Shown: piece after piece, positions 173 through 17,656 of the stretch
Numbering within the stretch: the first letter of the stretch is position 1
How the letters are laid out: each line of letters opens with the position of its first letter
Virus record (IMG/VR): IMGVR_UViG_3300045125_000071
Location: 1-64,000 of that record
Strand: one strand, 5' to 3'
Length of the DNA stretch: 64,000 nt
Notes under the pieces: model-generated
The model's input: only the letters and a program-made list of their open reading frames with translations
Database searches by the model: none
Told to the model about the DNA's origin: nothing
Program-made: the position numbers and the translations under genes

Positions 173-1297
173 TTATTGTTTTTTTATTTCAAAATATTCA
201 TTTTGATACACAGATAATTCTCCAATACTTTCAATATCACCCAATCTAAAAATTTTCTCCATGACACTTTGTTTTCCCCGTTGGACAAAAATGTCCGAAT
301 ATATTGTTGGTTCATCAACAAACCCAAGAAAATGCTCATTTCTTGTTATTATTTGATTAAAAACATCCTCTTTGTATATCCAGTTGTTGTACCAGTAATC
401 ATAGTATAACCATCTGAATAATCTTTATAGTATAAACCATTTATTGTATATGCGCTATAGTTACCTACGGAATCTGTGCCAGTTGTTATGCCAGAATAGG
501 TATTTGAACCATATAATTTAAGTGACGATATTTGACTTTTCCCTATTGCTAAATATGTGAAACCATTCAAAGTGTATCCTGTATTATTGGTATAATCTAA
601 ATCATTTAAATAATTTTGTGTTTGACCTGTTAAATTTGAATACGCTGGTATCGTAATCCCAGTAAAAGTTCCCAATTCATTTTCAACTTCCAAATTACCA
701 GGTACTTGTATTTTTTGATAATTTTTCATTAGACCATGGCGATTGTAAGGAAATTGTTATTGTATATCCAGAATTTACTAAGTATGTATGTGAAACACTT
801 GGTAAATTCGTATTTGATTTGCCGCTGTTTACATCAATTTGGGATGTATGTCCATCACCCCAATTTACAGTATATGTTTGTTGAACAATTAACCTTAATT
901 TATCTGGATTTACTGTGTTATAGACAGTAACAGTATTATTAGATTGTTTGTATGTAAAATTTACTATTTGTTCAATTTGCTCGATATTACCGTCAAAACC
1001 AACCATTACACCAAATTCATCTGTATGTGATTCTAAGTACACAGGTATGTTGTAACTGAAATAAGTATCTTCTTTATCTATATTAACCCATTTGGTACCA
1101 TTCCAATTATAGTAACCTTCAGACAATGTTCCACCAGTGTTATAATATACATCATTAATATTTGGACCATAATAGATGCTACCTGACCACGCAAATAATT
1201 GATTATTTGAATCATACCAATTCTGGCTAGTTTCAGATACTAATATTGTTTTTGGTATGTTGTTTATCAGTATTTTATAATCATTTTTATTTAACAT
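173..1297 (-). CDS. virion structural protein with PKD/Ig-like domain (ORFs 695-1297, 349-729 and a C-terminal piece joined across indels)
   Basis: YTVNWGDG...SHTY PKD-type motif; reading continues across frame changes to EIKKQ* at 173. Confidence 0.6.
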
Positions 1298-2101
1298 GTT
1301 GCACCTCCTTTCTCATAGAATTTTATAGGATTCTGTCTTGTTCCCGCTCTCACACCTTTTTCACCATCGTATTCGTATATTTTATAAGAATAGTTTGCCA
1401 TGTCAATATCCATTTGATAATAAATGTCATCAGATTCTGAAATTTCTGTAGTTGGGGAAAGACATTTATTAGTAAAATCTAACACATCACCATTTTTAGC
1501 GTTAAAATATTTTGCGGTTACCCAAAAAGTGTTTCCAGTATATAGCGTTTCATCATATGGTGTTGTATCTTGGAACCAATAGATATACATATTTTCTTTA
1601 TTCCTATAATTATTTCCAGTAAAAACTGGTACAAAGACATAATCATTTAAATTATTTTTTGTTGTATAAAACTTTTCTCCTGAGGTAAAAACTAGATTTT
1701 TAGCAAATACTAATTTTCTATTTGCTCTTTCTGGAGATTCGTTATTTGGAGTTTTATAAAATTCTAGTCGAAAAAAACTTTTTGTTGCTTGTGATAATAA
1801 AGATTTATTTTCAGAATTTGATAACTCTGTTGCTTCATAATTTTGAACATATGTGTTATTATTTATAAAGTAAAAATAAAACCATATATCAGTTTGTAAT
1901 AAATTAATATCACTAGTTATACCAGAATATGCTTCATGTATATATCTAACAGTTTCATAATTTTCTGGGTCATTAGTTACGACCTCTAACATATCGTTTT
2001 CATATTCAGAAAAAACTTTCAGACCAACCCAAATTGTTTTGGAATGGTTGTGTGTTAGTAAAAACAATATTATTATTTTCTGTTATTCTTAATGTTTTCA
2101 T
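1291..2101 (-). CDS. hypothetical virion protein of the baseplate cluster
   Basis: ORF 1291-2067 plus frameshifted start MKTLRITENNNIVF at 2101. Confidence 0.6.
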
Positions 2102-2102
2102 A

Positions 2103-3868
2103 TTAACAATCAATAATTCTTGTTAAGAATTCTTTAAACCATCTGATTTATTTGTGTAATTTTTTTCATTACGTAAATAAAAATTTATACTTTTTCTACA
2201 TAATGTATATCGTTTGCAAATGGAAAATCTGTACCATATCCATCAGTATCTACATATCCATGGTCATATAAATCTCTCCATTTCCATAAACCTTCTTGTT
2301 CGAAATATTTTGTGTTTTCTGGTAAATTCAAAACATCATTTGTTTTTGAACTTTCAATATATGGTGATAATTGTCTAATTTTAATAGAATAATGTGGTTG
2401 ATAATATAAACCATATAAATTTGTCGATGATGCTCCAGAATAATTTGCTGGGTCATCTTGACCATGATAAAATATAGATGTTGGTATTGTTAATTTGTGA
2501 TATGCTTCACTAATAACACGCTCTTTCATTTCAGATGCATTGTATTCAACAAACGCACCAGTTAATATTGTTCCTTTTTCAAGTGTTGTTCCACTTTTAA
2601 ATGAATATGTTGTGGTGTTTTGTGTTTTAGTAAATGTTGAATATGATAACGTATTTTCATTAGATTTTGGTCCATCAAAATGATTATCAATCCAGGTATC
2701 ATGAAAATTAAATTTCCAGCCGACTTTTAATGGATAATCAAAATACCCATTACCATTTTTAAATATAATTGATGATATATATCTCTGTTGGTGTATATCC
2801 TAAATTATTTGTAATTCCAGATAAAATAAAATGGTGTTTTAAAATCATATATTAAACTTTCCATTTTATTTTTTTCAACTAAAACATTATTTTCACCTGA
2901 GTAATTTTCATATAATAATTTTTTTCATCTCTCCATATTGGAGATTCAAATCCCACTTTATCTAATAGATAATCATTTGCATCTGTAATTGTTTTATGTT
3001 TATGTACATAATATTGTGATGTTGTTCCGCTAATATCTCTAACATTTAAACATCTTTTACCAAGATAAACATAATTATCTGTTAGAGTTAAGCCGCTTTT
3101 CATTTGTTTTTTTGAAATTTTTACAACATAGTTTTCTGAATCATATGTGTTATTCCCAATTGAATTAATGTAAAACGTTTTATCTTTTATATCTAATGTA
3201 TTGTTAAATGTTCTTCCGCTAATAACAATATATTCACCAGAATTCATACCATGTTTAACTGGTGATGTTAAAATATAATAATCATCATCAGAAGTTATCC
3301 TAAACGGTATTCCATCTCCAGAATTAAAACTATATACAGTGTTACCAGAATAAGTGTATATTTCATCAAATTTTGTATCACCAAAAAACGTATGATAAAT
3401 AAATGTTCCAGTTCTGATATGGTGCTTGTATATCAGTAATAGTTGTGTGGCCTGTATATTGTGTTGTTAATTGTATATTTTTGACTAAAATTTGAAATTG
3501 AAAATCCGCTTTGTGGTATATTTATTTCTCTTAATATATCATTTCTTAAAAACGCAAATTCATTATATGGTAAATAACCTTCATAATTATTTCCTATTGT
3601 ATCATTTTTAAATACAGATTATTTTTTAAATAAACATAATCAGTATTACCAGGAATAATCATTATCAAAATCATTTTTATTTTACCAAATATTTTATATT
3701 TAATACTTTTATTCTTTTCTTTTTGATATAAATCAGCAACATCTAATACAATATTCCTATCATTTTCTCTAATATTGTTTCATTATTATATAATTCTAAT
3801 AATGTTTTGATTTCTTCTAGGCGCATTAAAATATTTTTTACTTGGTAAAATAATTTTTTGTTTTTCAT
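2103..3868 (-). CDS. hypothetical virion protein (~590 aa, frameshifted)
   Basis: Fragments 2879-3247 and 2185-2529 join through intervening open frames; start near 3868, end IIDC* at 2103. Confidence 0.55.
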
Positions 3869-3869
3869 T

Positions 3870-6800
3870 AGACACATTTATAAAGCGTTTCTTGAGGCCA
3901 AAATATTTTATTAATAAGTCAAAAGCGGTTTTGTTAGGTGTTATACCAATGTAAAATAAAAATGGTGTGGATAACACTTGCTTTGAGCCGCTATAGTTTT
4001 TTTCAGTTTGAAATAGAAACATTTCATATTTGCTCATTAACAAATCCTTGAGATTGTTTAACCCAGGTTTTGTTTACTACAACATATATATCACCAGTTA
4101 TTGGTTTGCTTTCTATAATCAATACCAACATATGTTTTAACATGTAACCACAAATCACCATCAATAAATGACAATGCACCATTTACAGATGTATCAGGTG
4201 ATTGATTACTAATAACTTCATATCTTTCTAAAGTTCCAACTTGATAATTTCCTTCTAAATTGTAAGTTGGGTGTGTTATGGTCATAGGTTTTGGTAAGTA
4301 TTCTTCCTCAGCGTCAGCCATTAAATAATTTGTTGTGGTTGAATTATGTGATGAAACTGAAAATATTCCTTGTAATTTCATAGTCGCAATATTTTGCCTG
4401 TCCCATTTTTGTATGTCAGATAGATTTCCATAATTACCAAAATAGCCTTCATTACCTTTATCCATAAATAAAAGTACTTTTGTGAAAAATCGCCAAGTCT
4501 ATAATTTGAACAACCTCTAATAAAACTGCCATTTCATCAAAATTTAAAATCTATTGGTAATGGACTATATAAATTACTGTTTTTAAAATATGTTGCGTAA
4601 TAAGGGTCATCTATGGGTCCAAAAATCCATTATTAAACATAAAGTAATGCATGGACTCTCTAAATCAAAAGCTTCGATTCAGCTTCACAATTAAATAGAC
4701 ATGAGTTGATAATATGTCGCCATCCAAACCTTGTATGTTTGGTCCATAATCGTCCTGCCACTAAAAAAATCACCAATATCTACTTTACCGTTATATATAA
4801 TCAAGCTTATAATTTAAACGCATATTCAATAATATTGCTCAGGTCTTGATATGATGTCTGAGATATATCTCTGGCTACAGAACAATTTGGGTCTACTGTT
4901 GGGTCTGTACAAATTTCATTAAAGAAAATATCTCCTGTCACCTAAATGCATAAATGTTGTTGGATCTTAATATTTGTCTTTAGATAAACATTATTAATTT
5001 TAAAGAAACTTTGACCAATAAATTACCCCACTTTTGTTTTCATATTTAATATGTGTACTCTATAATAGAAATTTTCATCCAATATGTTAAAAATATAATT
5101 CTCTTATAATTTGAAACCTTGGTTTAAATCATAATTTTGTAAATCATCCCATTTAATTCTTTATCAATTTAAAAAATACAAGACACCATTAAGCCAGGTA
5201 TCACCAAATGAATATTTACGATACACCACAAAAATGATAACATAACTCTTTTTCTTCTATACACACACATTCTTTAATGACGTCCATATTTTTTTACGTG
5301 TATAATTTTTAGTATAATTGTAAAAACACCATCTCTAAATTCAGATAATCCAGATTTTGTTCTCTATCATATGTTGCGTTTGGTATTTTTGTTATATGAT
5401 TTTTTATATGGTAATCATACTATTATTGGCACCAATTAGCATTGTTGAGATTAAAATTTTATTAAATGGTTTCGTTAAAGATTCTTCATAACCTCCAGTA
5501 TATGTAGGTGGGTTTAGCGGGTCTGTTGGGCTTCCGTAATCAGATGTTGTGTTCCCCATAAATATGTTTTTATTATTGACTCATCAAATACTGAATCCAT
5601 ATTTAGAACAACCTTAATTCAATTTCTATTCCATTATTTGACGTTGATGTTGGCGTATCAACTAAAACATGCCTATAAAGTTATGTATAAGTGTTTTCAT
5701 CATCAATAGATTGCAATTACTATAATCAATTCAGTGAGTCTAAACCATTTATCATAAGAAAATTCAATATATTTTCCTGGACTAAACCAGCATCGGTCAT
5801 TTTCAGACGTAATCAACATTAAATTTAATATCGGTATCATTAATGTTAATATCGTTGAAAAAACCAACAAAATTATTAGTAATACTATTCAAATCCGATG
5901 ATGAATATACTTCAAGCATAATATTTTGAAGTGTTATTATCATTTGGTATGTTTACAGAATATGTATGTAAATTATTCAACTCAGAATAAACCATAACTG
6001 GAATATCTTCACATTCTGAGTTATTTGACTTAGAAGATTCATTTGGAAAAAGACATTATTAGAAGTTGTCCCAATATCCGAATCGCTACTAAAATTAGTA
6101 ATACTATTCGAATCTTTAATATATAATAAAACAACATTTTCACTATTAATTGTAAAATTGTCAACTTTTTTAATTTTACTTCAGCAACTCTACAGTATGT
6201 GTTAGTATAATTTATATTTTGTAGCTATAGCATCAACATCTTGGGAACACTCTTCACAATCTGGATAAATTATTAACGGTAATGTTTTTGTAAAATTTGA
6301 TTGTATTTTATATGATGCATCTAATAATTTTTTCAGAAAATCTTTTGAATAATTCTTTTTCCAATAAAAATGTATCGGCAAAAAGTCTATGTAAATCATA
6401 AAGTATTGAGCCAAGAATCTCACCAACTTTTACTGATACTGTTGTGAATATGTATTGAAAAGTGAGTACAATGTTCAGATCAAAATTATTGAAAAAATTT
6501 CTTATATTATTAAAAGCAAAATTTGTTGGAAAGAATTTACTTTTGATGTGCAATCACTTCCTCATCTTTTGGTCTTATTTGTTTTACACCCAAAACGCAT
6601 CTTTGGATTCTCTCCTTAAAAATGAATTTATAGCAATTGCACCAGGTGTAAATGATGGTAATTGAGGTGCCGATTGATAATGTGTTCCTTGAAATGAAGA
6701 AACGGTATAGACTTTTCCATATACGAATTTATAGAAATAGTCTTCTGGTACACCATTATTAAAAGTACCAAGCATTAAATCTTTTTATGGTTTTTAACTG

Positions 6801-8119
6801 CTTGAGAATAATTTGTTGTGTTGAACGTAACAGACGATAGCGGCGGTAAGACATTTATATAATCCTCAAAAACATCTGAGAACTGATATGTTGCAAAGCA
6901 TACCCATACTATACTCATATCTGGTATTCAATCCTGTGACAGTATCTGGATTAAATTCTCTAATATTTGGTACTAGATACTTTGCTGTTGTTTTTTCTAT
7001 CTTCAAAAAGTAAACTAAATCTAAATCTTGCAGTGGTTGTTGTTGGTACTCCTTTAGATGAATCGTTAGTTATTTCTTGCTCCCCAAATTCGTTTGTGTA
7101 AACATAATCCATGTTCATGGGTAATGGTGCCATAGCAACACCATCCTCATCTATAACATCAGTGATGGTTAAATATTCTAATTCAGGGTAAACCGACTTA
7201 CCATCAGAACCTGTTACTTTTTTTCCAGTGTATCTGACACATTCAATGGTTCCTGGTGCAGTTTGTAAATTACATTTATAACCAGACCTTGGCCTAATTC
7301 TACCATTTCTTTTATAGCATCACTGTTATCATCTGTAAAAGATGAAACTAAAATTAATGATACTGGTTCAATTTCAATTCCAACAGTAGTTAAATCAAAA
7401 TCTGTTCTAGTGATACCAATTTCACATAGATTTTGATTACTCCAAAATGGATAAACATCTATTGTTTTGAAATTTACAATTTGTGGTAACCCGTCAATAT
7501 CGCTACTTGGATTTAAAATTATGAAAACCTATCGAAATTTTCTTCATTAATCCCTTTTTATAAAATCATATGGTCGTAATTGAAAACAACCTAGTACGGA
7601 TAAATCAATATCAATATGTATAGTCTGAGAACCAACAGGAACTCCCATATCATAAAATCGCCAGCATCATTTGTTTTTACAGTATAATTGTAATATTTTT
7701 CATATACTTCTAAAACCTCTTCCCTGGTTAAAATATCTTTCTTGGCTTGAGGAATGTTCCAGTTGGTGTGTGGACCACCATGTTGTTTTTCTGATGGTAA
7801 TAAATTATACCGATACCCATTTTCATTTTTATCTGAAATTTGTAGTGTAGGGATATGACGCATTTATTACTGGGTCGTCAGAATCATTGGCATCTTGCTC
7901 TATAAAAATTGAAACTTTGGCATTTGGTATACCAAGACCATTATTTGCGCTTATGCGACCTACAACCACGCCATAATCAGGAACACAATGACGAATAGAT
8001 GTCTTTTTGTGTAAAATTTCAAAGACAAGATTTCTAATAAATCATAGTCTTGTTTAAGTTCTACCAAAATCTTTTGGTCTCTACCAATACTTAGTTGAAA
8101 TTCTATGTTTTTGTATCAT
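3870..8119 (-). CDS. very large baseplate-associated structural protein (~1400 aa, many indels)
   Basis: Start MIQKHRI at 8119 after TATTTAT; fragments 7591-7863, 6584-6775, 6202-6426, 4091-4465 and 3786-4043 are collinear; follows the gp6-like wedge gene. Confidence 0.5.
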
Positions 8120-8174: not shown

Positions 8175-10007
8175 TTAAAATGAAGTCGTACCTAATGTTT
8201 TAACCCTAATTTTAATATCTTTATTTGGAAATCTTATTTGATAAATTTGATTAGACTTCATATATATTGTCATATCAGATTGTTGAACTTCTTTTGTTAT
8301 GTTATCTTTATATGCTTGGGCAACTTCTGAACTAGAATATTCCCCGCCAATAAGATTAAAAACCCTAACATCAACAACGTTCACAATTCCATTTATATTA
8401 CCAAGAATCCTATATAAATCACCAACAAACAATGGGTCACCCATTTTTCTTCTATTAATTGAAAAATATTCCGTGACATCATCTATAGTTGTTCTCAACA
8501 CTTCTGTTTGGTTTATATTTTTATCGACAACTAAATCTATTTCTAATTTAAAATCTATGACTTCTCCGCTTTCAATATCTAAATAATCATTTAGCATTCT
8601 ATATTGTGACAAATATTTTATTATATTATTTTTTAAAGTATTTGAAACAACATTTGTAAGATTACCTCTCTCATCATAAGATAATATTTTAATTCTAACT
8701 TTATTATCTTCCTCGGTAACATTAACCTTTGCTGGTGCACCAAAAACAGATGGCATATTTTCTATCATTGATTTATAGTCATTTAAGGTAACCGCCCGAT
8801 TTTGTGCTGCAAAATTGTATGCGACCATATTTCTAATTTCTTCTATAGATGGTTGGTCAGCGCCACCTATTGCTGGTGTTACATTTGTAACTCTTAATGA
8901 TTGTTCAACTTGGGTATTAATTGTTGAGTTTGGACCAAGAATAATAAAATCAATATTATCAACACTAGTTATAACATTTACACCCAAATTAGAATCTTGT
9001 CCTCCACCAATTCTATATTTTACAAATAGCGTAGTATTAGATTTTGGTGTCATTCCAAGTGACATATTATTTAGATAACTTGATAACGAAACCTTTAAAT
9101 TATTTGTCATAAAATTGTCCAAATTGTCCATAGGGTCAACAACGCCAGAACCAAAAGTTAATGAGAAAAATCCTTCTGGTGTATATTCCGTTATAAATTT
9201 ATTTGATATTTTCAAATAAACACCAGCAGTATAGTTATCCCTATCTGATACTGATGTTGGGTCTGGAATAAAAACACTATCCTCAACTAAAGATTTAACT
9301 TCATACCATCTATTTGTTACAGATTCAAATTCAGAAGGTAAAGGGTTTGCACCAAAATTTGTGCCTTCTTTATGGATTACTGAGGTAACACCTAATACAT
9401 TTTGTTCAGGTAAAAATAATTTTAAAAATGGTTTTTGGTCTGACTGATTTATAACCCTTCTATAAATTCTTGTTACACCATTTACAACAGCATCTCTTTT
9501 AACAATTGTATATGAAATGAGTCTATTGTTAGCATCAAAATTTGGTATTTTTAATCTGTTTGGTTCTCCTTTACTATTAAAGGGATTTGAAAAATCAATA
9601 TCTTCAATTGTTTCAAATATTTGTCCTCCACCAGATACTTGTGCACCACTTTTTAAAACACCCAAGTATCTTTCATCTTCTTTATCACCCCTGACAGGTA
9701 CGTTAACAGAAAAATCACATAACGCTACTGATGGCCTATTTCCAGGTATCTCTTAATCCATATGTTTTTGCAATATGAAATAAAGATTGGCGTTGTTGTG
9801 CAAAATCTAAAATAGTTTCTTGCCAAACTCTGTCTATATGAAAGTGCATATTATCCGCAACAGCAGCATTCATATCTAATAAAACAGAAAAATAGACGCG
9901 TCATTAGTATTGGTTGCTAAATCTGGATAATATTGTTTTGTTAAATTAACAAGTTCTTCCCTTAACCCAGCGAAATCCCTTGTTGCGTAAGATATCTTTT
10001 TACTCAT
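8175..10007 (-). CDS. baseplate wedge subunit (T4 gp6 / baseplate J-like)
   Basis: N-terminus MSKKISYATRDFAGLREEL; motifs YRIGGG, GGAD.PSIEEIR, QNRAVTLNDY; adjacent to gp25-like gene. Confidence 0.85.
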
Positions 10008-10008
10008 T

Positions 10009-10461
10009 TTATATGTTTATAATTATGAAATCAGAGGTTGAAAATGCTCCGTTATTGACAGTATAATCTATTTTAACCTTAGCTGTATATGGTTTTGTAG
10101 AGTAATTTGAAACTCTAAATAATCTTTCGTCTTCAAGCTCATTTACACTCATAACGTCGCTTGGGTCATCTTCTGCTGATGTAACAGTTATAGAATTAAT
10201 ATCGAGATTTGGAATGTATTTTTTTACACTTTCTCTAATCTCTTCTTCAATTAATCCCCACGTCACAAAATCATTTTGGTCAAAAATAAATTCATATATT
10301 CTTGTTCCAAAATCTGGTAAATAATAACGAGAACCTCTTCTTGTTAATATCAAATGTATTAAATTAGCCCTAACTTCTCTTTCGGGAATTTCGGTCATAC
10401 TTAAAAAATCACCTTTTTGACTGTCCCTAAAAGGAAAATCTATACCATATTTAACTGCCAT
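10009..10461 (-). CDS. baseplate wedge / sheath-initiator protein (T4 gp25 / GPW family)
   Basis: GIDFPF...NLIHLILTRRGSRYYLPDFGT.IYEFIFD; intact 150-aa ORF. Confidence 0.9.
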   Translation of the reverse strand: MAVKYGIDFPFRDSQKGDFLSMTEIPEREVRANLIHLILTRRGSRYYLPDFGTRIYEFIFDQNDFVTWGLIEEEIRESVKKYIPNLDINSITVTSAEDDPSDVMSVNELEDERLFRVSNYSTKPYTAKVKIDYTVNNGAFSTSDFIIINI

Positions 10462-10472: not shown

Positions 10473-10500
10473 TAATGATTGATGAAATGTATATAAATAA

Positions 10501-10529
10501 GAAAACCCAGATTATTGGTCTGAGTTTTC
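10501..10529 (-). terminator. intrinsic terminator closing the accessory island
   Basis: GAAAACUCAGA-7 nt loop-UCUGGGUUUUC, 11-bp stem followed by UUAUUU. Confidence 0.6.
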
Positions 10530-10694
10530 TTTTATTTTAGTATTACCCCTTTCTCCCTTTGGTTCATATGGACAATGTCTACATCCGTCTTTCTTTGAAC
10601 CACAACAATATCCTCTTTCGATGTGGTATTTTTCGGTGAATACCACTCTATCACCATCTAAATAATAATGAACTTCTTTTATAAATTCTTTCAT
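10512..10694 (-). CDS. small Cys-rich protein, DUF5522-like
   Basis: YYLDGDRVVFTEKYHIERGYCCG....CRHCPY. Confidence 0.7.
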   Translation of the reverse strand: MKEFIKEVHYYLDGDRVVFTEKYHIERGYCCGSKKDGCRHCPYEPKGERGNTKIKENSDQ

Positions 10695-10705
10695 GGTATT
10701 ATTTT

Positions 10706-11535
10706 TTATAAACTAATAATAGATTGAAGATACTTTTTATATTCTCCCAATCCATTTTCTAAATTATATTTTGGTTCCCACCCATCCATCCATAAAATTT
10801 TATTTGAACATGTGTAGAACTGGTATCCAAATGGTATTTTATTTTCTTCATGATATGTAAATGGAATATCCATAATATCCAATATATCTTCGAATGTTCT
10901 TGATTCACCATAACCAACATCATAAAATTTTCCTTTAAGTTTTACATAATTGTCTTCAGCATATAAATTAGCATTTACAACATCTTTAACATATATAAAA
11001 TCTCTTTTAGGTTTTAATGGGAATAATTTACATTCTTCATGTTTTCTATGTTTAATAAACGACTGATATGCGACAGATGACATCCGTCCTTTATGTTCTT
11101 CCCCTGGACCATACACATTAAAATATCTAAGTGCAATACCATTGTTTGATATTACATATTTCTCTGCAACGTATTTGCTCCACCCATAAAGATTAGATGG
11201 ATATTTCCCATTATCACCATAATTCGCTGCCGATGATGAATAAATCATTTTTGTGTTAGTCTTTACACAATAATCAGTTAAAATCTTTGTGAATTCAAAA
11301 TTTAACTTCATCATGTAATTAACATCTGTCTCTAATGTATCAGAACATGCCCCAACATGAAAAATAACTTTTGGGTTGTTCTTTTTAAGAATACCTAAAG
11401 GTTTTCATCCCAATCAGAATCATCAAATATATCTTCGTTTATTTCAATAACAAAATATGAAGACATTCTTCTAATTGTGTTAGCTAAATTTTTTCCTATG
11501 AACCCTTTTGCCCCTGTTACTATAACATTTACCAT
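10706..11535 (-). CDS. hldD: ADP-L-glycero-D-manno-heptose 6-epimerase-like extended SDR (one indel region)
   Basis: VTGAKGFIG Rossmann motif at 11535 start; YSSSAANYG, YGWSK (YxxxK), LRYFNVYGPGEEHKGRMSSV, RDFIYVKDV. Confidence 0.85.
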
Positions 11536-12268
11536 GGTGTTACTACTCCTCTTTTTGATACTACTATTGATGACATTTCATTTTGCAACTACAATAGAGT
11601 CTAAAATGTTTTTGTTTGATGATATTTTAAAATAAACGATGCTGTAAATGTATCTCCAGCACCACTAACATCTATAGTTTCCTTTGGTGATGGTGATGGG
11701 AATATATCATTTTTGTATTTGACACCTTTAGACCCTAATGTGATTAAAATATTATCAAAATTTTTAAACCTTGATTATTTTTCGCTTCGTTTTCATTTAA
11801 CTTAACAAATGTGAATTTACTTATTGTTTCATCATCAAGTATTTTTTTTGAATCAAGTATAGATAACTTAGAAAGATTACCGATAATATTTAATGATTTA
11901 ATATTTAAAAACCCTTTATCATAATCACTTACAATTACAATGTCGTATTTTGGTATTTTTTCTAATAATTCGTTAGTTAGATTTATACCAGATATATTTT
12001 CCTCACCTTCATCTAATCTTAAAAACATATGATTACTTTTTTTATCAACGTATCTTGTCTTTGTAATTTTTTCATTTTGAAAAATTTGATTGATATTCAA
12101 TGATTTATCAAGTGATTTAAGATTGTTTAAAACATTACCTGACATTCCTTTATTTCTTATAATTTCTATTGGATTTAAAACAGGTACAGGTGCTTCTGGT
12201 GATAATCTTTTACAATCCCCATAAATAAAAACATCATCACAAACCTCACCTATTATTAATATTTTCAT
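11529..12268 (-). CDS. hldE: D-glycero-D-manno-heptose-7-phosphate kinase (stand-alone HldE/RfaE PfkB domain)
   Basis: RLSPEAPVPV, SDYDKG, KLNENEA and (after a frameshift) DVSGAGDT; stop overlaps the hldD start. Confidence 0.85.
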
Positions 12269-12330: not shown

Positions 12331-12825
12331 TTAATTCTTAATATTGTCGATTGAAATTATATATTTTGATATGTTATCAATACCGTCATCTATATTTTTA
12401 AAATAAATCCTTTCTTCTTGCTCATCATAATCCGCCAGTTTGATTAAAAAATCTCTCACAACATTTTCTGGTTCATTTTCTAACCAATCGTATTCCCAAC
12501 TATTTTCATAATTCCACCCTGGCATGTAGGCAAATGGTTTAATTTTATATTTATTAGATAATTTATCCCCATCTAATGTAATTCTATAATCAGTTTTAAC
12601 TTGCCAAGTCGTATTCCTTTTATGAAAATTTTTATTTCTTGTAAAAGAAATATAGTTTAGTTGATGTCCTCTATAAAATTCTTCTGAAGTATTTAATTTA
12701 TTTGTTTTTAAAATGTTTTCTAAACCAGTTTTAGAAGTATAATGGTACAATAATCCGACTTGCTTTGATTCATTCAAAACAATAATCATGGATTTAATTC
12801 TTGATATTTGTTCTTGTAAATTCAT
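12331..12825 (-). CDS. putative ADP-ribosyltransferase-fold protein with an N-terminal pro-peptide
   Basis: MNLQEQISRIKSMIIVLNE leader, then LYHYTS, YISFTR and DEQEERI, in the order expected for ART catalytic motifs. Confidence 0.45.
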   Translation of the reverse strand: MNLQEQISRIKSMIIVLNESKQVGLLYHYTSKTGLENILKTNKLNTSEEFYRGHQLNYISFTRNKNFHKRNTTWQVKTDYRITLDGDKLSNKYKIKPFAYMPGWNYENSWEYDWLENEPENVVRDFLIKLADYDEQEERIYFKNIDDGIDNISKYIISIDNIKN

Positions 12826-12836: not shown

Positions 12837-13628
12837 TTATACCACCATTGATTTATCTTCAATTGGTTTGTAGTGTATAATTTCTATTTTACCATCATCA
12901 TGAATCAATATTGCTGTCATTGATTCGACCCAGTCACCTGAATTTAAATAATGAACATTATCAATAATTCTATCCATTTCTTGGTGAATATGTCCACATA
13001 TTACTCCTTGACATCCATGATATTCGGCCATTTTTGCTGCGGTATTTTCAAAATCATTGACATAGTTTGTGGCGGTCTTTACTTTTTGTTTCAATGGTTT
13101 TGATATTGATTTATATTTAAAACCTCTGAATTTTCTCCATTTATTATATTGCGTATTCATCCATAACGCAATATCATAACCAACACTACCAATTTTTGAT
13201 AACCATTTATATTTTAACATGAAAATATCGATTTCATCGCCATGAAAAACAAAGTATCTTTTATTTTCAAATTTATCTTGGGTAATCCATTTATTAATAT
13301 TTATAACATGATTTTTTACTATTTTTATATTACCCATGTTAAAACCAATGTAGTCATCTAAGAATTCATCATGGTTTCCTCTAACCCATATGACTTCAGT
13401 TGTTTCAGATATTTTCAATAGTTTATTTACAACTTTAGTATGTTTTTTCTTCCATTTTGAACCTCTTTTCAATGCCCATCCATCTATTATATCTCCATTC
13501 AAAATTAAAGTATTACAAGAGGTATTGTCTAAAAATTCTATTATTTCATTTGTCTTTGAATCTCTTGTACCCAAATGTAAATCAGAAATTACAATCATAT
13601 TAACCATTCTATCAGTTTTATAAAACAA
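12837..13628 (-). CDS. metallophosphoesterase of the LpxH2/PlcP (phospholipase C) type
   Basis: All five motifs: ISDLHLG, NGDIIDGW, RGNHDEF, FHGDE, ICGHIH; C-terminal YLNSGDWVESMTA. Confidence 0.85.
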   Translation of the reverse strand: MFYKTDRMVNMIVISDLHLGTRDSKTNEIIEFLDNTSCNTLILNGDIIDGWALKRGSKWKKKHTKVVNKLLKISETTEVIWVRGNHDEFLDDYIGFNMGNIKIVKNHVININKWITQDKFENKRYFVFHGDEIDIFMLKYKWLSKIGSVGYDIALWMNTQYNKWRKFRGFKYKSISKPLKQKVKTATNYVNDFENTAAKMAEYHGCQGVICGHIHQEMDRIIDNVHYLNSGDWVESMTAILIHDDGKIEIIHYKPIEDKSMVV

Positions 13629-13680: not shown

Positions 13681-14355
13681 TCATGACCAATAATTATGTG
13701 ATTTGTAAAACCAAGATTTATTATTTCTATTAAACCAACTTTTTATGATTAGTACATACATCCACATAACACCTTTTTTATCAAATCGTCTGCCAGATGT
13801 ATATATATACTTTTTAACTAACTTATGTCTATCTTTAAGTATCATCCTACTTAATAACCAATCTTCGGCAACTTTTACGTTTTCGTTAAATTTTCCACAT
13901 TCGATAAATTTTTTTGTTCTCCATAATTGAAATCCACCTATTACAAAAGTCTCTGGTAGTATTTTTTGTAATAAATGAAACCCATTCCATAACCAATCAT
14001 ATTTTTTATCATCACATCGATATATACAAGAAACCAAATCATATTCGTCAATCGATTTTAAACAAGTTTCAATTAACTTTGTATCATATATCATCATATC
14101 CGCATCTAAAAATAAAACGAAAGGGGTTTGACATAAATCAAACCCCTTGTTTCTTGCAATAGATGGCAATCCACCATCGATTATTTTTATATGATTTTTG
14201 TTTTTAACATAATCATGTAATTCAACGTCTTTAATATCTGAAGAATCTGCAATAATTATATCAAAATTTATAGATTGTAATTCTAATAATTTTAAGCATT
14301 TTATAAGTGTATGACCTTCATTTTTTGATGGTATAACAATTGTTAGAATATTCAT
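13681..14355 (-). CDS. family 2 glycosyltransferase (GT-A)
   Basis: IVIPSKNE, IIIADSSD, ARNKG, LFLDADM (DxD), AEDW, TSGRRF. Confidence 0.9.
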   Translation of the reverse strand: MNILTIVIPSKNEGHTLIKCLKLLELQSINFDIIIADSSDIKDVELHDYVKNKNHIKIIDGGLPSIARNKGFDLCQTPFVLFLDADMMIYDTKLIETCLKSIDEYDLVSCIYRCDDKKYDWLWNGFHLLQKILPETFVIGGFQLWRTKKFIECGKFNENVKVAEDWLLSRMILKDRHKLVKKYIYTSGRRFDKKGVMWMYVLIIKSWFNRNNKSWFYKSHNYWS

Positions 14356-14383: not shown

Positions 14384-17300
14384 TTATATGCGTGTAATTT
14401 CGCAACTTGACCCAGAACAAGCCATTGAACCATATTCTCCAATGTCCTTATATTGTGGTTTATCAAGAATTTCGCCAAAGTTAACTTCCTTGAACTGACG
14501 AGTAACGGTTTCCCACTTGTGGAAAAGATGCACATCCTTCAAGCAATATACCATTTTTCTCATGTCACCCTTAAAGTAATTCTTAGCGAATTTCTTTGCC
14601 CTATCTAACCAATATTTCTTCAATAATACTTGTTCCCTTGTTCCTGTAATTGGTAGAGCATATTCTGTGCCCATATTAATTAAAGTATCACAAGCTAACC
14701 AAAGGTTGTTGTCGAAGTAATGGAGACCATCTACAACCAATCCAGAAGCCAATACAGCGCCTTTTCCATATTCCTCGACAAGTTCTTCGAGGTTAAGTAC
14801 TGAGGTGAATGGTGCTTGGTTAAAATCCTTATCGCCGTAGTCTGACATGAATGATACCGCAGTAAATTCTTCTTTATTATCCCAAATGTAATCTACAATA
14901 ACATCCTTGTCATCAATGATTACAGTGCAACTGGTATTGTGGTTTACAGGATTATATATACATTTTTCTGGATTTGTACCAGCATTAACCCAGTTTTGTT
15001 GGACTAATTTGATAAGTTCAAGGTGTTTAATACCCTTCATATCTTTTTTGAACAACCCTTTTTTAGGGTTCTCAACAGGGACGAATACAACATAATCACT
15101 TTTTGTTTGCGACCAAACACTATCTTCTAATAAGAAGTCCATATTATCAACCAACCATTTAGCAGTATTGGATTCTTTGTTTAATTGCATGACTCTGAAA
15201 TATTTTTCAGAATGTTCTGGATGAATACCAGATGCTGTACCAAGAACTACAGATGCATTACCTGAAGGTTTAACGCAAGTGGTTCTTGCTGCCTGATTAA
15301 TATCAATAACTTCTGCAAGTTCCTTATTTGTTTTCTTAACAATCTCAGCACCTTCTTTAAGAAGTTCGGCGTTGAATAACATCGGATTATTCATCCAACC
15401 AGTTATGCTCACACCAAGCAACGCCTCTCTTGCAAAAATCTTTTCACTAACCTCTCCAAGATATGGGAAACTGTTATATCCCGCCTGAAGTGTACCAAGG
15501 ATTGTCGCGTCTTTACATGCCTTAAAGAATTTCTCTTTTGTTGTACATTTTTCAGCATTAATCTCTGATAGGTTGCATTGTTTAGTTAAAACATTATTAA
15601 ATAACCCTTGATGTTTATATTGTTCTTCAAAACAATATGAATTGTGGAATCCTTCTAATTGTACAATACTATCAATACATTGATATTTACCCTTATATTT
15701 TACTTCACTTGGCTGAAACCTAGTTTTGGTTGACCATAATTCTCCACAATCACTAATTTGAACATACCAAACATCTCTATTTCTTGTTCCAAAGTTTGTT
15801 ACCTCGCCCTTTTTGCTACAAAGATTAACAGTAGAATTTACCCCAATTTTAGTTAATAAAAGTTGTAAATCCCTAATCTTGTTTTCTTCACCATAAATTC
15901 TGGCTTTGTTATTATATGTAATTGTTCCATCGGTATCTATCCAACCAGCAATAAATGCAAGAATTGATTTTTTACTCCAACTAAAAATTTCAGAAGGTAA
16001 ACCATCTTCATATTTTAATTTATGAGATAGTTCCTTATCTAACTTATTAAAAGTAACATTATAATATTCTGTTTCAATTCCATTATAAGATTCTTTTAAT
16101 TTTTTACCAATTGTACCATCAACAAAAGGATATTCATTAGAAAAATTACTTTCATAGACAGAAGCAAAGGGGGTTCTGTATTTATCACCTATCTTAGGAC
16201 AAGTACCATCGCCTAAAACAAAACCATAATCATAAGCATAAATTTCATCGTGACCAAAATCAAAATCATTTACATTACTTCTTGGTACTTGAAGTTTATA
16301 TTTGGTAGTTTTTAGCAATTCAATTAAATCTTTTGTCTCGATTTCTTTAAATTGTTTTTCAAATCTATTTTTAACTAACCATTTATGGTTTTCAGTACAA
16401 TCCAAATATGAACCATCATTTAATTTTACCCTAAAAAGTTTTCTATTTGTACCAGTAAGAATAGGTTTGACTTTTGACCAATTTTCTCCATTCCAAATTT
16501 CAACCTCCCTATTTTCATCAACTACCTTACCAATCATTTCAATTCCATCCTTAGTAATTAATTTTGTTTCATATGAAACACACCCTTGGATACCAAACTT
16601 ATGTTTGTTCACACTCACATAATGCTCAACATCTTCATAGTCGATTTTTGAGAAATCAACCTCATCGAGTATTGGTAATTTCAATATTTCAAAACATGGG
16701 TTGAACATATCAAACCAAGAATTTGCGAATACAAAACCAATATCGTTTGCACCATCGTTTAGTTTAACAAGATAATCAAACTGGTCTTTAGTCACTTTAC
16801 CCCTTAACAAGAGAACCGAATTGTTCGACCTTGCTCTTTGTGGATTTTCTTCTCTCCAATTACCCGTTTTAGCATGAATCATTTCGGTATCATTTGGGTC
16901 AACAATCATATTTAATGCTGACCTTCTAACCCCGCCAGACAATACCGCATCAGATGCATGACAAATGATGTCAAATGCCAAGATTGGCCTGATTTTATTT
17001 CCTTCCTTATCAATCCACCTTTCGATTAATTGTTCGATTTTTTCAAGGGATTGTTTAAGTCCATCGGGACCAGGAGCCTTGAATCCGCCACTAATGAATG
17101 TACCCTTTTCTCTAACTTGTGAATAATCAAATTTAACCTCATATCCTGCATATTCAGGGAATGGTTGGTTGTCAACAAAATATGATGACAAAAGAACGCC
17201 GAGTGAGTCCGCCCAACCTTCAATAGAGTCAGGTACAACAAATGTCTTAGCACCTAAAACCCTTTTCTGAATACGACTAAGATTATTAACAAATGGGATT

Positions 17301-17656
17301 AACAATCCGCCACCAACACCGCAACCAGATAAACCAAGATAAAATATTTCTTGGAATACTCTATTCCTCATTATGTGTGTACTAGTACAGTTATACATCC
17401 TTGTGTTATGTCTCAAAATTTCAGTATGTCTATACTGCAAATTTCTTTGAGATGCTAACACAACCTGGTCTTCCATACTTTCAAGAGCAGATTGTAGATA
17501 TTCTTCAATCTGATAATTAGAGTATTTTTGCCTATGACCATTTATAATGTCTGCACAAGCCTCTTTCCAATTTTCGTACCTTCCAATTTCATCCCTCCAT
17601 TTGAAGTAATCGGAATACAATTTTAAGTCGCTAAGAAATTTCTTACCTTTTTGCAT
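14384..17656 (-). CDS. nrdJ: class II (B12-dependent, monomeric RTPR-type) ribonucleotide reductase with intein
   Basis: YNCT, GGVRRSA, NPCFEI (radical Cys), CNLSEIN, TTCVKPSGNAS, C-terminal ACSGSSCEI; intact 1090-aa ORF. Confidence 0.93.
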   Translation of the reverse strand: MQKGKKFLSDLKLYSDYFKWRDEIGRYENWKEACADIINGHRQKYSNYQIEEYLQSALESMEDQVVLASQRNLQYRHTEILRHNTRMYNCTSTHIMRNRVFQEIFYLGLSGCGVGGGLLIPFVNNLSRIQKRVLGAKTFVVPDSIEGWADSLGVLLSSYFVDNQPFPEYAGYEVKFDYSQVREKGTFISGGFKAPGPDGLKQSLEKIEQLIERWIDKEGNKIRPILAFDIICHASDAVLSGGVRRSALNMIVDPNDTEMIHAKTGNWREENPQRARSNNSVLLLRGKVTKDQFDYLVKLNDGANDIGFVFANSWFDMFNPCFEILKLPILDEVDFSKIDYEDVEHYVSVNKHKFGIQGCVSYETKLITKDGIEMIGKVVDENREVEIWNGENWSKVKPILTGTNRKLFRVKLNDGSYLDCTENHKWLVKNRFEKQFKEIETKDLIELLKTTKYKLQVPRSNVNDFDFGHDEIYAYDYGFVLGDGTCPKIGDKYRTPFASVYESNFSNEYPFVDGTIGKKLKESYNGIETEYYNVTFNKLDKELSHKLKYEDGLPSEIFSWSKKSILAFIAGWIDTDGTITYNNKARIYGEENKIRDLQLLLTKIGVNSTVNLCSKKGEVTNFGTRNRDVWYVQISDCGELWSTKTRFQPSEVKYKGKYQCIDSIVQLEGFHNSYCFEEQYKHQGLFNNVLTKQCNLSEINAEKCTTKEKFFKACKDATILGTLQAGYNSFPYLGEVSEKIFAREALLGVSITGWMNNPMLFNAELLKEGAEIVKKTNKELAEVIDINQAARTTCVKPSGNASVVLGTASGIHPEHSEKYFRVMQLNKESNTAKWLVDNMDFLLEDSVWSQTKSDYVVFVPVENPKKGLFKKDMKGIKHLELIKLVQQNWVNAGTNPEKCIYNPVNHNTSCTVIIDDKDVIVDYIWDNKEEFTAVSFMSDYGDKDFNQAPFTSVLNLEELVEEYGKGAVLASGLVVDGLHYFDNNLWLACDTLINMGTEYALPITGTREQVLLKKYWLDRAKKFAKNYFKGDMRKMVYCLKDVHLFHKWETVTRQFKEVNFGEILDKPQYKDIGEYGSMACSGSSCEITRI
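15578..16582 (-). mobile_element. 335-aa intein with LAGLIDADG endonuclease, ending in Gln
   Basis: GIQG|CVSYETKLIT...CTENHKW...YGFVLGDG...FIAGWIDTDG...YCFEEQYKHQGLFNNVLTKQ|CNL; removal leaves a 755-aa RNR. Confidence 0.92.

What the first reader, a model, noticed from the sequence alone, without database searches (positions are those of the whole stretch)
10706..12268. Phage-encoded partial ADP-heptose pathway (HldE kinase and HldD) next to the baseplate genes
Seen: overlapping, probably translationally coupled kinase and epimerase genes. Known: these make ADP-L-glycero-D-manno-heptose, the donor for LPS inner core and for AAH/TibC protein heptosylation, and an ALPK1 agonist. GmhA, GmhB and the nucleotidyltransferase are not in this window. 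Inference: many Bacteroidota may not make heptose, so the sugar could be for phage use (virion glycan, DNA modification or receptor masking).
Basis: partly seen in the sequence, partly recalled or inferred. Interest (0 to 1): 0.62.

Follow-up and report, generated by a model that had tools for sequence, protein, structure and literature searches.

The report
Phage heptose kinase and epimerase genes
A large T4-like phage carries virus-type copies of two of the five enzymes that make the sugar donor ADP-heptose; this is a known kind of phage gene set, the copies look broken here almost certainly because of sequencing errors, and the same phage record also holds a TibC-like enzyme that could attach heptose to proteins.

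Summary
On the minus strand of 10706-12268 lie homologues of the heptose-7-phosphate kinase (HldA / HldE domain I) and ADP-heptose 6-epimerase (HldD). Neither is an intact ORF as sequenced. The kinase has three single-base frame breaks and the epimerase one, all within 11398-11765. Read through, both are collinear with intact relatives (58% and 76% identity), and the kinase stop overlaps the epimerase start (ATGGTAA).

The breaks are most likely assembly errors. The same density of breaks hits the DNA polymerase, prohead protease, tail sheath and tail tube of this record, a 251-kb IMG/VR contig rated 75% complete.

The genes belong to a virus-specific clade with more than 2,400 metagenomic homologues. 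In relatives, and in cultured cyanophages such as P-SSM2 and S-CAM3, they form a modular cassette: cupin, HAD phosphatase, adenylyltransferase, kinase, epimerase. This record has only the last two. It has no SIS isomerase, HAD phosphatase or adenylyltransferase, so the phage must rely on host enzymes or on the unassembled quarter.

A new lead lies outside the window. The record (249.1-250.1 kb), and three relatives right beside their cassette or epimerase gene, encode a TibC/BAHT-like protein heptosyltransferase domain. DNA heptosylation finds no support.

Verdict: a new member of a known kind, of moderate interest.

The parts
11529..12268 (-). [quoted passage not shown]
   Evidence: TIGR02198 is the best hit on all three pieces, and Pfam PfkB hits the piece with the DVSGAGDTF motif. 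The frameshift-aware alignment gives 58% identity to the intact 246-aa kinase of L010 with no stops. The N-terminal RLSPEAPVPV motif aligns with HldA 4E84 in the relative.
10706..11535 (-). HldD-like ADP-glycero-manno-heptose 6-epimerase, about 273 aa when read through; one single-base frame break
   Evidence: TIGR02197 scores 175 bits on the 232-aa piece. PDB AGME entries 4EJ0 and 1EQ2 match at about 1e-31, against 1e-10 for GalE. Identity to the intact P0002 is 76% over 273 aa. The Rossmann motif GAKGFIG is in the N-terminal piece, and the SSSAA, YGWSK and HKGRM motifs are conserved.
11396..11775 (-). Patch of about 370 bp that holds all four indels (near 11756-11765, 11613, 11582 and 11398); most likely assembly error
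   Evidence: The same kind of break occurs at about 2.4 per kb in other genes of the record, including essential ones. Long-ORF coverage is 33%, against 58-95% in eleven comparison phage stretches.
11529..11535 (-). Seven-base overlap (ATGGTAA) of the kinase stop and the epimerase start
   Evidence: Read directly from the sequence. Relatives overlap by 4 nt.
10512..10694 (-). Small Cys-rich DUF5522 protein (60 aa) directly after the epimerase
   Evidence: Pfam PF17653, 6e-15.
10499..10531 (-). Terminator-like hairpin followed by a T-rich tail, between DUF5522 and the baseplate genes
   Evidence: This is a consensus scan only: 4 sites found against 1.0 expected.
12331..12825 (-). 164-aa protein of unknown function directly upstream of the kinase; weak ADP-ribosyltransferase-like leads only
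   Evidence: Pfam Tox-ART-HYD1 at E 0.0097, below the cut-off. Atlas neighbours are virus-only hypothetical clusters, with DarT/PARP and Arr clusters at 0.87-0.90.
12837..13628 (-). Calcineurin-like metallophosphoesterase (weakly LpxH-like)
   Evidence: Pfam Metallophos 2e-16. NF003743 scores 40 bits against a cut-off of 134.
13681..14355 (-). Family-2 glycosyltransferase
   Evidence: Pfam Glycos_transf_2 1e-15.
10009..10461 (-). Baseplate wedge protein, gp25-like
   Evidence: Pfam GPW_gp25 and PHROG baseplate wedge.
8175..9665 (-). Baseplate wedge protein, gp6/J-like
   Evidence: PHROG 219 and 6, Pfam Baseplate_J.

Best explanation
Shown: the two genes are virus-lineage versions of the first committed enzyme (heptose-7-phosphate kinase, HldA type) and the last enzyme (ADP-heptose 6-epimerase, HldD type) of the ADP-L-glycero-beta-D-manno-heptose pathway. 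They sit head to tail with overlapping stop and start in a T4-like jumbo phage. They are a two-gene version of a modular cassette (cupin, HAD phosphatase, adenylyltransferase, kinase, epimerase) that is common in large aquatic myoviruses.

Inferred with good support: the four frame breaks are homopolymer-type assembly errors, and the genes are intact in the living phage.

Inferred: during infection the kinase and epimerase work with host enzymes, or with genes in the unassembled quarter of the genome, for the isomerase, phosphatase and adenylyltransferase steps. Together they raise the supply of ADP-heptose and set its C6 configuration.

Inferred, least certain: the sugar is used by phage glycosyltransferases. 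The best candidate is the TibC/BAHT-like protein O-heptosyltransferase domain at 249.1-250.1 kb of the same record, which would heptosylate a protein, possibly a beta-helical tail-fibre or baseplate protein.
For: Identity of the genes:
- The top family and structure hits are the heptose enzymes by wide margins.
- In relatives three neighbouring genes each hit a different ADP-heptose enzyme best: TIGR02199, TIGR02198 and TIGR02197.
- The catalytic motifs are kept.
- The epimerase falls in a virus-only clade (24 rows, SH-aLRT 100), separate from 78 cellular HldD sequences that are at most 43% identical.

The breaks are artefacts:
- The record has 24 breaks in 9.9 kb of other aligned genes, against 4 in 1.56 kb here. 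The other genes include the prohead protease, sheath, tube, a ClpB-like ATPase and the TibC-like gene.
- The DNA polymerase is split into at least 3 frames.
- Both +1 and -1 breaks occur, beside A or T runs.
- There is no excess of substitutions and no nonsense codons other than those the shifts create.
- ORFs of 200 aa or more cover 33% of the record, against 58-95% in comparison phage DNA, including two stretches of the same GC.

The cassette is modular: relatives carry five-, four-, three- and one-gene versions.

A candidate consumer exists:
- The TibC-like domain in L012 matches PDB 4RAP at 2e-46.
- The homologue in the own record matches at 1e-22 to 1e-5 in pieces.
- It keeps the Asp110, Thr226/Lys230 and Trp305 equivalents and four Cys matching the iron finger, and has Ser at the Pro300 position (residue roles from PMC4358343).
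- It lies beside the epimerase in L012, L013 and L014.
- It lies 17-490 nt from a full cassette in 4 further viral loci.
Against: - No reads could be examined, and no second assembly of this phage exists in the protein collection: the nearest epimerase is 78% identical. The breaks are therefore not directly shown to be errors. They are also clustered in 370 bp, while the flanking 5 kb is clean.
- All family scores, even for intact relatives, are below NCBIfam equivalog cut-offs (epimerase 196-201 against 274.6; kinase 114-120 against 345). Both proteins are 40-70 residues shorter than the cellular enzymes, so the substrate could differ.
- Only 4 of the 80 best viral TibC-like loci have heptose genes within 10 kb.
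- Cultured cyanophages with the cassette gave no TibC-like match, so the link is not obligate.
- The host is unknown.
- The TibC-like gene lies at the far end of the record, not beside these genes.
Confidence: 0.6

Rival explanations
1. Classic auxiliary-metabolic reading. The kinase and epimerase boost or redirect the host's own LPS inner-core heptose synthesis, to keep the envelope intact during infection or to mask receptors against superinfection. No phage-specific acceptor is involved.
For: This is how the homologous genes are annotated and discussed for cyanophages and aquatic viromes (PMC7378029, PMC9611531, PMC10747093). A partial pathway fits a booster of host flux. The neighbouring GT2 and LpxH-like phosphoesterase are also envelope-type functions.
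Against: The record and its relatives carry a TibC-type rather than a WaaC/WaaF-type heptosyltransferase; no LPS heptosyltransferase appeared among the PDB matches. The cassette sits in phage glycan islands with methyltransferases and multidomain glycosyltransferases, next to tail-fibre or baseplate genes. There are no functional data either way.
Confidence: 0.25
2. The two genes are true pseudogenes: a decaying remnant of a five-gene cassette whose other three genes have already been lost.
For: Four indels lie in 370 bp while the immediate neighbours are intact. The cupin, HAD and adenylyltransferase genes that flank the pair in relatives are absent from the whole record.
Against: Indispensable genes of the same record are broken in the same way and at the same density. 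Natural decay would also add substitutions and nonsense codons, yet identity to relatives is even across the patch and every catalytic motif is kept. Reduced cassettes with intact genes exist in relatives.
Confidence: 0.12
3. The enzymes act on a related but different sugar, for example another phosphosugar or NDP-sugar. The virus clade would then have drifted away from heptose chemistry.
For: Scores are below the equivalog cut-offs and both proteins are shortened. The clade is at most 43% identical to any cellular HldD. There is no SIS-type GmhA in any relative; a cupin stands in its place.
Against: Three separate cassette genes each match a different ADP-heptose enzyme best, 30-150 bits ahead of the next family. 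The HldD catalytic Ser, Tyr-x3-Lys and second Lys motifs are invariant in the clade. The heptokinase-specific N-terminal motif is kept. A heptosyltransferase-type GT is linked to the cassette.
Confidence: 0.1
4. The heptose is used to hypermodify phage DNA, as heptosylated 5-hydroxymethylcytosine.
For: There is a precedent: a reconstituted phage gene cluster put one or two heptoses on 5hmC (bioRxiv 10.1101/2023.12.21.572611).
Against: The 251-kb record has no Tet/JBP dioxygenase and no C5 cytosine methylase. Its ThyA-family gene scores as an ordinary thymidylate synthase: 318 bits on NF002495, just under that model's 327-bit equivalog cut-off. The linked GT is TibC-like, not T4 beta-GT-like. 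Caveat: a quarter of the genome is missing.
Confidence: 0.03

Closest known systems
[quoted passage not shown]
   Same: Extended short-chain dehydrogenase fold. It has the N-terminal GxxGxxG motif and conserved SSSAA, YGxSK and HKGxM motifs. From my own knowledge of the E. coli enzyme these correspond to Ser116, Tyr140/Lys144 and Lys178. HldD is the best family and best structure match.
   Different: About 272 aa instead of about 310-340, and at most 43% identical to any cellular homologue. It forms a separate virus-only clade and scores below the TIGR02197 cut-off. It is broken by one frame shift in this record.
HldA / kinase domain of HldE (Burkholderia 4E84)
   Same: PfkB fold with the DVSGAGD anion-hole motif and the heptokinase N-terminal RxSPEAPVPV motif. 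TIGR02198 is the best hit.
   Different: About 245 aa instead of about 315. It is a separate gene, not fused to an adenylyltransferase domain, and no adenylyltransferase is found anywhere in the record. It scores well below the cut-off and has three frame breaks here.
Heptose cassette of cultured T4-like cyanophages (P-SSM2 PSSM2_309-313; S-CAM3 C421010_107-110; also S-SM2, S-CAM1, P-TIM68)
   Same: Homologous kinase (35-41% identity) and epimerase (about 30%) in a T4-like phage. They sit in a variable region next to tail-fibre or baseplate genes and are annotated as LPS heptose genes (PMC7378029).
   Different: The cyanophages carry all five genes: adenylyltransferase, kinase, HAD, cupin and epimerase. 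The window record has two. The cyanophage epimerase is on the opposite strand, and no TibC-like domain was found in those phages.
TibC / AAH bacterial autotransporter heptosyltransferases (BAHT; PDB 4RAP, 4RB4)
   Same: The C-terminal domain of the relatives' multidomain protein, and the homologue at 249.1-250.1 kb of this record, align over TibC 61-381. They keep the catalytic Asp, the Thr/Lys and Trp sugar-binding residues and four Cys matching the iron finger (PMC4358343).
   Different: It is fused behind methyltransferase and GT1/GT4 domains in a protein of about 1,100-1,200 aa. It is encoded by phages, and its acceptor is unknown. It has Ser where TibC has Pro300, as in AAH, which accepts both ADP-D,D- and ADP-L,D-heptose. 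The Arg286 equivalent is not clearly conserved. It lies outside the 64-kb window.
Phage gene clusters that put heptose on 5hmC in DNA (bioRxiv 10.1101/2023.12.21.572611)
   Same: A phage-encoded route to an activated heptose used by a phage glycosyltransferase.
   Different: That system uses a HAD/APH fusion, a cytidylyltransferase and a T4 beta-GT-like DNA glycosyltransferase beside C5-methylase and TET-like genes. None of these partners is present here.

Membership tests
HldD / ADP-glyceromanno-heptose 6-epimerase (TIGR02197) | Extended SDR fold with an N-terminal GxxGxxG dinucleotide-binding motif | tested here: met
   GAKGFIG lies in the N-terminal piece 11395-11577. Pfam Epimerase matches both pieces.
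HldD / ADP-glyceromanno-heptose 6-epimerase (TIGR02197) | Catalytic Ser, Tyr-x3-Lys and the second catalytic Lys | tested here: met
   SSSAANYG, YGWSK and HKGRM align with the same motifs of 4EJ0. They are invariant in 14 clade members. The residue roles are from my own knowledge of the E. coli enzyme.
HldD / ADP-glyceromanno-heptose 6-epimerase (TIGR02197) | Score at or above the curated equivalog cut-off (274.6 bits) | tested here: not met
   The window fragment scores 174-175 bits. Intact relatives P0002 and P0007 score 196-201 bits. It is still the top hit, with GalE next at 44-53 bits.
HldD / ADP-glyceromanno-heptose 6-epimerase (TIGR02197) | Uninterrupted reading frame | tested here: not met
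   One -1 break lies near 11398. It is judged an assembly error.
HldD / ADP-glyceromanno-heptose 6-epimerase (TIGR02197) | Interconverts ADP-D,D- and ADP-L,D-heptose | not testable with these tools
   This needs an enzyme assay or complementation of an hldD mutant.
HldA / HldE domain I heptose-7-phosphate kinase (TIGR02198) | PfkB fold with the DxxGAGD motif | tested here: met
   DVSGAGDTF lies in piece 11601-11774. Pfam PfkB matches at 1e-7, above its cut-off.
HldA / HldE domain I heptose-7-phosphate kinase (TIGR02198) | Heptokinase-type N-terminal segment (GD..D.Y..G...RxSPEAPVPV) | tested here: met
   IGEVCDDVFIYGDCKRLSPEAPVPV is present. The same segment of the L012 relative aligns with HldA 4E84 residues 55-103.
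HldA / HldE domain I heptose-7-phosphate kinase (TIGR02198) | Score at or above the curated cut-off (345 bits) | tested here: not met
   The best piece scores 85 bits. Intact relatives score 114-120 bits. It is the top hit, ahead of ribokinase at 46-48 bits.
HldA / HldE domain I heptose-7-phosphate kinase (TIGR02198) | Uninterrupted reading frame | tested here: not met
   Three breaks lie near 11756-11765, 11613 and 11582.
Complete ADP-heptose pathway (GmhA, HldA/E, GmhB, HldC/E, HldD) | Sedoheptulose-7-P isomerase (SIS-type GmhA, or the relatives' cupin) | tested here: not met
   PF13580 finds none in the record. A profile of the relatives' cupins finds nothing below E 0.3. The record is 75% complete.
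Complete ADP-heptose pathway (GmhA, HldA/E, GmhB, HldC/E, HldD) | Heptose-1,7-bisphosphate phosphatase (HAD) | tested here: not met
   TIGR01656 finds none. A profile of the relatives' HAD proteins finds nothing below E 0.7.
Complete ADP-heptose pathway (GmhA, HldA/E, GmhB, HldC/E, HldD) | Heptose-1-P adenylyltransferase (HldC / rfaE domain II) | tested here: not met
   PF01467 finds none. A profile of the relatives' transferases finds nothing below E 0.35.
TibC/AAH-type protein heptosyltransferase (BAHT), for the gene at 249.1-250.1 kb of the record | Catalytic Asp110, sugar-binding Thr226/Lys230/Trp305 and four iron-finger Cys | tested here: met
   SLGDT, STAQAKYW, GLSSGLSW and four Cys (CHGC, WCP and a final C that aligns only with a one-residue gap) appear in the read-through alignment. 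The same residues in L012 align to TibC. Residue roles are from PMC4358343. The Arg286 equivalent is unclear.
TibC/AAH-type protein heptosyltransferase (BAHT), for the gene at 249.1-250.1 kb of the record | Transfers heptose from ADP-heptose to Ser of a beta-helical protein | not testable with these tools
   The acceptor is unknown. This needs co-expression and mass spectrometry.

The most novel reading that the evidence does not exclude
Large environmental phages run their own protein O-heptosylation system. A phage-made or phage-boosted ADP-heptose supply (this kinase and epimerase, or the full five-gene cassette in relatives) feeds a phage-encoded TibC/BAHT-like heptosyltransferase domain. 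That domain decorates a phage protein, most plausibly a beta-helical tail-fibre or baseplate protein, given the repeated placement of the cassette beside such genes. Heptosylated virion proteins have not been described in any paper my searches found.
Probability: 0.3. Interest if true: 0.7.

Novelty: new member of a known kind. Interest (0 to 1): 0.4.

Why it matters
On its own the finding adds one more, reduced, example of the heptose auxiliary genes already annotated in T4-like cyanophages. It also warns that this record's gene calls are damaged by indel errors.

The useful outcome is the context:
- The enzymes belong to a large virus-only clade.
- The cassette is modular.
- The isomerase step seems to be covered by a cupin rather than GmhA.
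- In several genomes the cassette is tied to a TibC-like protein heptosyltransferase, which is itself common in viral contigs (at least 579 loci).

This turns the vague label of 'LPS genes in phages' into a testable idea: do phages heptosylate proteins, and which ones? It can be tested directly with cultured phages that carry either part, such as Mel-JY01, P-SSM2 and S-CAM3.

Tried and rejected
- DNA-level search of the locus in the phage collection found no match.
- Another genetic code: the two in-frame TAGs at about 11603 and 11591 first suggested TAG recoding. I rejected this because a compensating -1/+1 pair gives a much better match to relatives, and TAG or TGA readthrough does not rescue genome-wide coding density.
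- Promoter scan: no more sites than in shuffles.
- PHROG scans of ten ORFs at 349-7528 gave no hits.
The control genomes of the genome search do not say which ones pass, so whether Bacteroidota make heptose was not tested.
- Ser at the TibC Pro300 position as a marker of co-occurrence with the epimerase: rejected, because 76 of 80 viral TibC-like loci have Ser whether or not heptose genes are nearby.
- Searching 12 relatives' full records for TibC-like domains was uninformative, because 11 are fragments only 3-32% complete.
Full report
**What is in the sequence**

The window is the first 64 kb of a single 251,358-bp contig with 31% GC and five tRNA genes. It is an IMG/VR virus record classed as linear and about 75% complete. 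It is a T4-like myovirus. It has an intact T4-type portal, sheath, tube and major capsid genes, and gp25 and gp6/J-like baseplate genes. Its portal is closest to Microcystis phage Mel-JY01 (43%) and Flavobacterium phages (39%).

On the minus strand of 10706-12268, table 11 does not give two ORFs. It gives pieces in three frames:
- 12268-11744, 174 aa
- 11774-11601, 57 aa
- 11577-11395, 60 aa
- 11404-10706, 232 aa

The first two pieces match the PfkB-type heptose-7-phosphate kinase best (TIGR02198, 6e-24; Pfam PfkB on the DVSGAGDTF piece). The last two match ADP-glyceromanno-heptose 6-epimerase (TIGR02197, 1.8e-51).

**The frame breaks**

I aligned the DNA to intact relatives, allowing frame shifts. 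The kinase needs three single-base corrections: -1 near 11756-11765, -1 near 11613 and +1 near 11582. It then reads as a collinear protein of about 245 aa, 58% identical to the 246-aa kinase of viral contig L010, with no stop. The two apparent in-frame TAGs come from the compensating middle pair, not from a recoded stop. The epimerase needs one correction (-1 near 11398). It then aligns over 273 aa at 76% identity to P0002.

All four sites lie within 370 bp, in or beside A or T runs of 3-5 bases. With the frames restored, the kinase ends at 11529 and the epimerase starts at 11535 (ATGGTAA). Intact relatives overlap by 4 nt.

**Are the breaks real?**

I could not look at reads, and no second assembly of this phage exists in the protein collection. 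The only 100% match is the window's own fragment, and the next is 78%. The indirect evidence points strongly to assembly error:
- The same alignment method finds 24 frame breaks in 9.9 kb of other genes in the record. This covers the ClpB-like ATPase (8), prohead protease (1), tail sheath (3), tail tube (1) and TibC-like gene (11). The rate is 2.4 per kb, against 2.6 per kb in the heptose genes.
- The family-B DNA polymerase is split over at least three frames.
- Both insertions and deletions occur.
- ORFs of 200 aa or more cover only 33% of the record. They cover 58-95% of eleven comparison phage stretches, including two with the same GC.
- The heptose genes show no extra substitutions and no independent nonsense codons, and they keep every motif that is invariant in the clade.

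A phage with broken polymerase, protease, sheath and tube genes would not be abundant enough to assemble. The simplest reading is patchy indel error. I put true pseudogenisation at about 0.12.

**What the genes are**

The epimerase fragment's nearest solved structures are all AGME/HldD (4EJ0, 1EQ2, 2X6T, 3SXP; 1e-31 to 1e-27), against 1e-10 for GalE. The SSSAA, YGWSK and HKGRM motifs line up with the catalytic Ser, Tyr/Lys and second Lys. The relatives' kinase is nearest to HldA 4E84.

Even intact relatives score below the NCBIfam equivalog cut-offs: epimerase 196-201 against 274.6, kinase 114-120 against 345, adenylyltransferase 94-97 against 181.5. Both proteins are 40-70 residues shorter than the cellular enzymes.

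The family is large and viral. More than 2,400 proteins match at E of 1e-10 or better, most about 270 aa and 60-78% identical. The best of 572 matches in 185,579 species genomes is 43% identical. In a tree, the 24 viral sequences including the window's form one side of a branch with 100% SH-aLRT support, apart from 78 cellular HldD sequences. Two cyanophage sequences sit beside them, with a long-branch caveat.

I therefore describe these as virus-clade HldA-like and HldD-like enzymes. They very probably have the same chemistry, but they are not formal equivalogs.

**Context in relatives**

In IMG/VR, ENA and JGI contigs the two genes are the end of a cassette: cupin (118-128 aa), HAD phosphatase (100 aa), cytidylyltransferase-fold adenylyltransferase (130-139 aa, best hit TIGR02199), kinase, epimerase.

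The same five genes are present in cultured cyanophages P-SSM2 and S-CAM3, next to tail-fibre genes. They are listed as heptose LPS genes in a cyanophage genome note (PMC7378029). gmhC, kdsD and lpxH appear among the viral auxiliary genes of Lake Baikal (PMC9611531). So the kind is known.

The cassette is modular. I found versions with five, four (no HAD), three (no cupin or HAD) and one gene (epimerase alone).

The window's record has the kinase and epimerase only. There is no SIS domain, no CTP_transf_like domain, no GmhB-type HAD, and no homologue of the relatives' cupin, HAD or transferase anywhere in 251 kb. Two enzymes cannot make ADP-heptose. The missing steps must come from the host or from the unassembled quarter.

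**Who uses the sugar**

Locally, the minus strand reads in this order: ribonucleotide reductase, GT2 glycosyltransferase (13681-14355), metallophosphoesterase (12837-13628), a 164-aa unknown protein, kinase, epimerase, DUF5522 protein, a terminator-like hairpin (10531-10499), then gp25 and the J-like baseplate protein.

The far end of the record (238-251 kb) is rich in glycosyltransferases.

In relatives the epimerase is followed by a methyltransferase and a protein of 765-1,139 aa whose C-terminal domain passes the Pfam GT9 threshold. That domain in L012 matches TibC, the dodecameric autotransporter heptosyltransferase, at 2e-46 over TibC 61-381. No LPS heptosyltransferase appears among the PDB matches.

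The window's record has a homologue at 249114-250147 on the minus strand. Pieces match at 1e-22 to 1e-5, and the read-through alignment gives 41% identity with at least seven frame breaks. It keeps the equivalents of TibC Asp110, Thr226/Lys230 and Trp305 and four Cys matching the iron finger. It has Ser where TibC has Pro300. That is the AAH state, which tolerates ADP-L,D-heptose (PMC4358343).

TibC-like domains are common in viral contigs (at least 579 loci). Only 4 of the 80 best have heptose genes within 10 kb, though in those four the gap is 17-490 nt. The cultured cyanophages with the cassette gave no TibC-like match. The link is therefore real but not obligate.

It makes protein O-heptosylation the best-supported specific use. 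I rate that step at about 0.4, and the full novel reading, which also names a phage protein as the acceptor, at about 0.3. Host LPS or receptor remodelling is the main alternative (about 0.25).

DNA heptosylation has a precedent but no support here. There is no Tet/JBP and no C5-methylase, and the ThyA homologue scores as an ordinary thymidylate synthase (318 bits on NF002495, just under its 327-bit cut-off).

**Host**

There is no Shine-Dalgarno enrichment upstream of 207 long ORFs (4% against 5.5% background), and the upstream tracts are A-rich. This fits Bacteroidota or cyanobacteria. The host is not established, and whether it makes heptose was not testable here.

**Verdict**

This is a new, reduced member of a known kind of phage auxiliary gene set, in a low-quality assembly. 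Its main value is the lead to phage-encoded TibC-like protein heptosyltransferases.

Noticed in passing
whole record; in the window e.g. 48096-50778 (DNA polymerase B), 38989-41877 (tail sheath), 5703-7528: The assembly carries frequent single-base frame breaks in patches. The DNA polymerase is in at least 3 frames, the sheath has about 3 breaks, and about 1.9 kb at 5703-7528 is split into about ten short same-strand open frames. ORFs of 200 aa or more cover only 33% of the record. Gene calls from this record should not be trusted without correction.
   Followed up: yes
record 249114-251140 (outside the window), minus strand: Homologue of a multidomain FkbM-methyltransferase/GT protein whose C-terminal domain is TibC/BAHT-like (a protein heptosyltransferase). 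It is heavily frame-broken. TibC-like domains occur in at least 579 IMG/VR loci, and in Mel-JY01 plus three huge uncultured phages (LR756501, LR756503, LR756504).
   Followed up: partly
L022 (P-SSM2) 6719-7400; L021 (S-CAM3) 5713-6370: GenBank labels look misplaced. The 106-114-aa 'phosphoheptose isomerase' is the homologue of the HAD-type phosphatase (42-50% identical to the L012 HAD). The neighbouring 'cysteine dioxygenase' or 'glucose-1-P adenylyltransferase related' protein is the cupin (weak D-lyxose and mannose-6-P isomerase hits), which is the more likely isomerase. No SIS-type GmhA is in any cassette.
   Followed up: partly
window 12331-12825 (-): The 164-aa protein just upstream of the kinase belongs to virus-only hypothetical clusters. 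It has only weak ADP-ribosyltransferase leads (Tox-ART-HYD1 at E 0.01; DarT/PARP and Arr clusters at 0.87-0.90).
   Followed up: partly
record 86414-89323 (outside the window), minus strand: The large terminase matches Mel-JY01 in two same-frame blocks separated by about 1.8 kb of extra DNA. This suggests an intron, intein or homing-endonuclease insertion.
   Followed up: no
record 229596-231244 (L104 3552-5244): A thymidylate synthase gene lies next to an ORF that matches a group I intron endonuclease (TIGR01453, 4e-12).
   Followed up: no
window 14384-17656 (-): The 1090-aa ORF matches ribonucleotide reductase over residues 15-325, then gives weak primase and terminase PHROG hits at 357-581. 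It may be an inserted intein or endonuclease, or a fusion.
   Followed up: no
whole record: There is no Shine-Dalgarno enrichment upstream of long ORFs. Positions -13 to -10 and -6 to -5 are A-rich, as in Bacteroidota or cyanobacterial translation starts.
   Followed up: partly
record 104886-112927: A cluster of five tRNA genes, one of which ARAGORN cannot assign (anticodon loop read as 'ca').
   Followed up: no
window 10512-10694 (-): A DUF5522 Cys-rich 60-aa protein sits between the epimerase and the baseplate genes, followed by a terminator-like hairpin. Its function is unknown.
   Followed up: no
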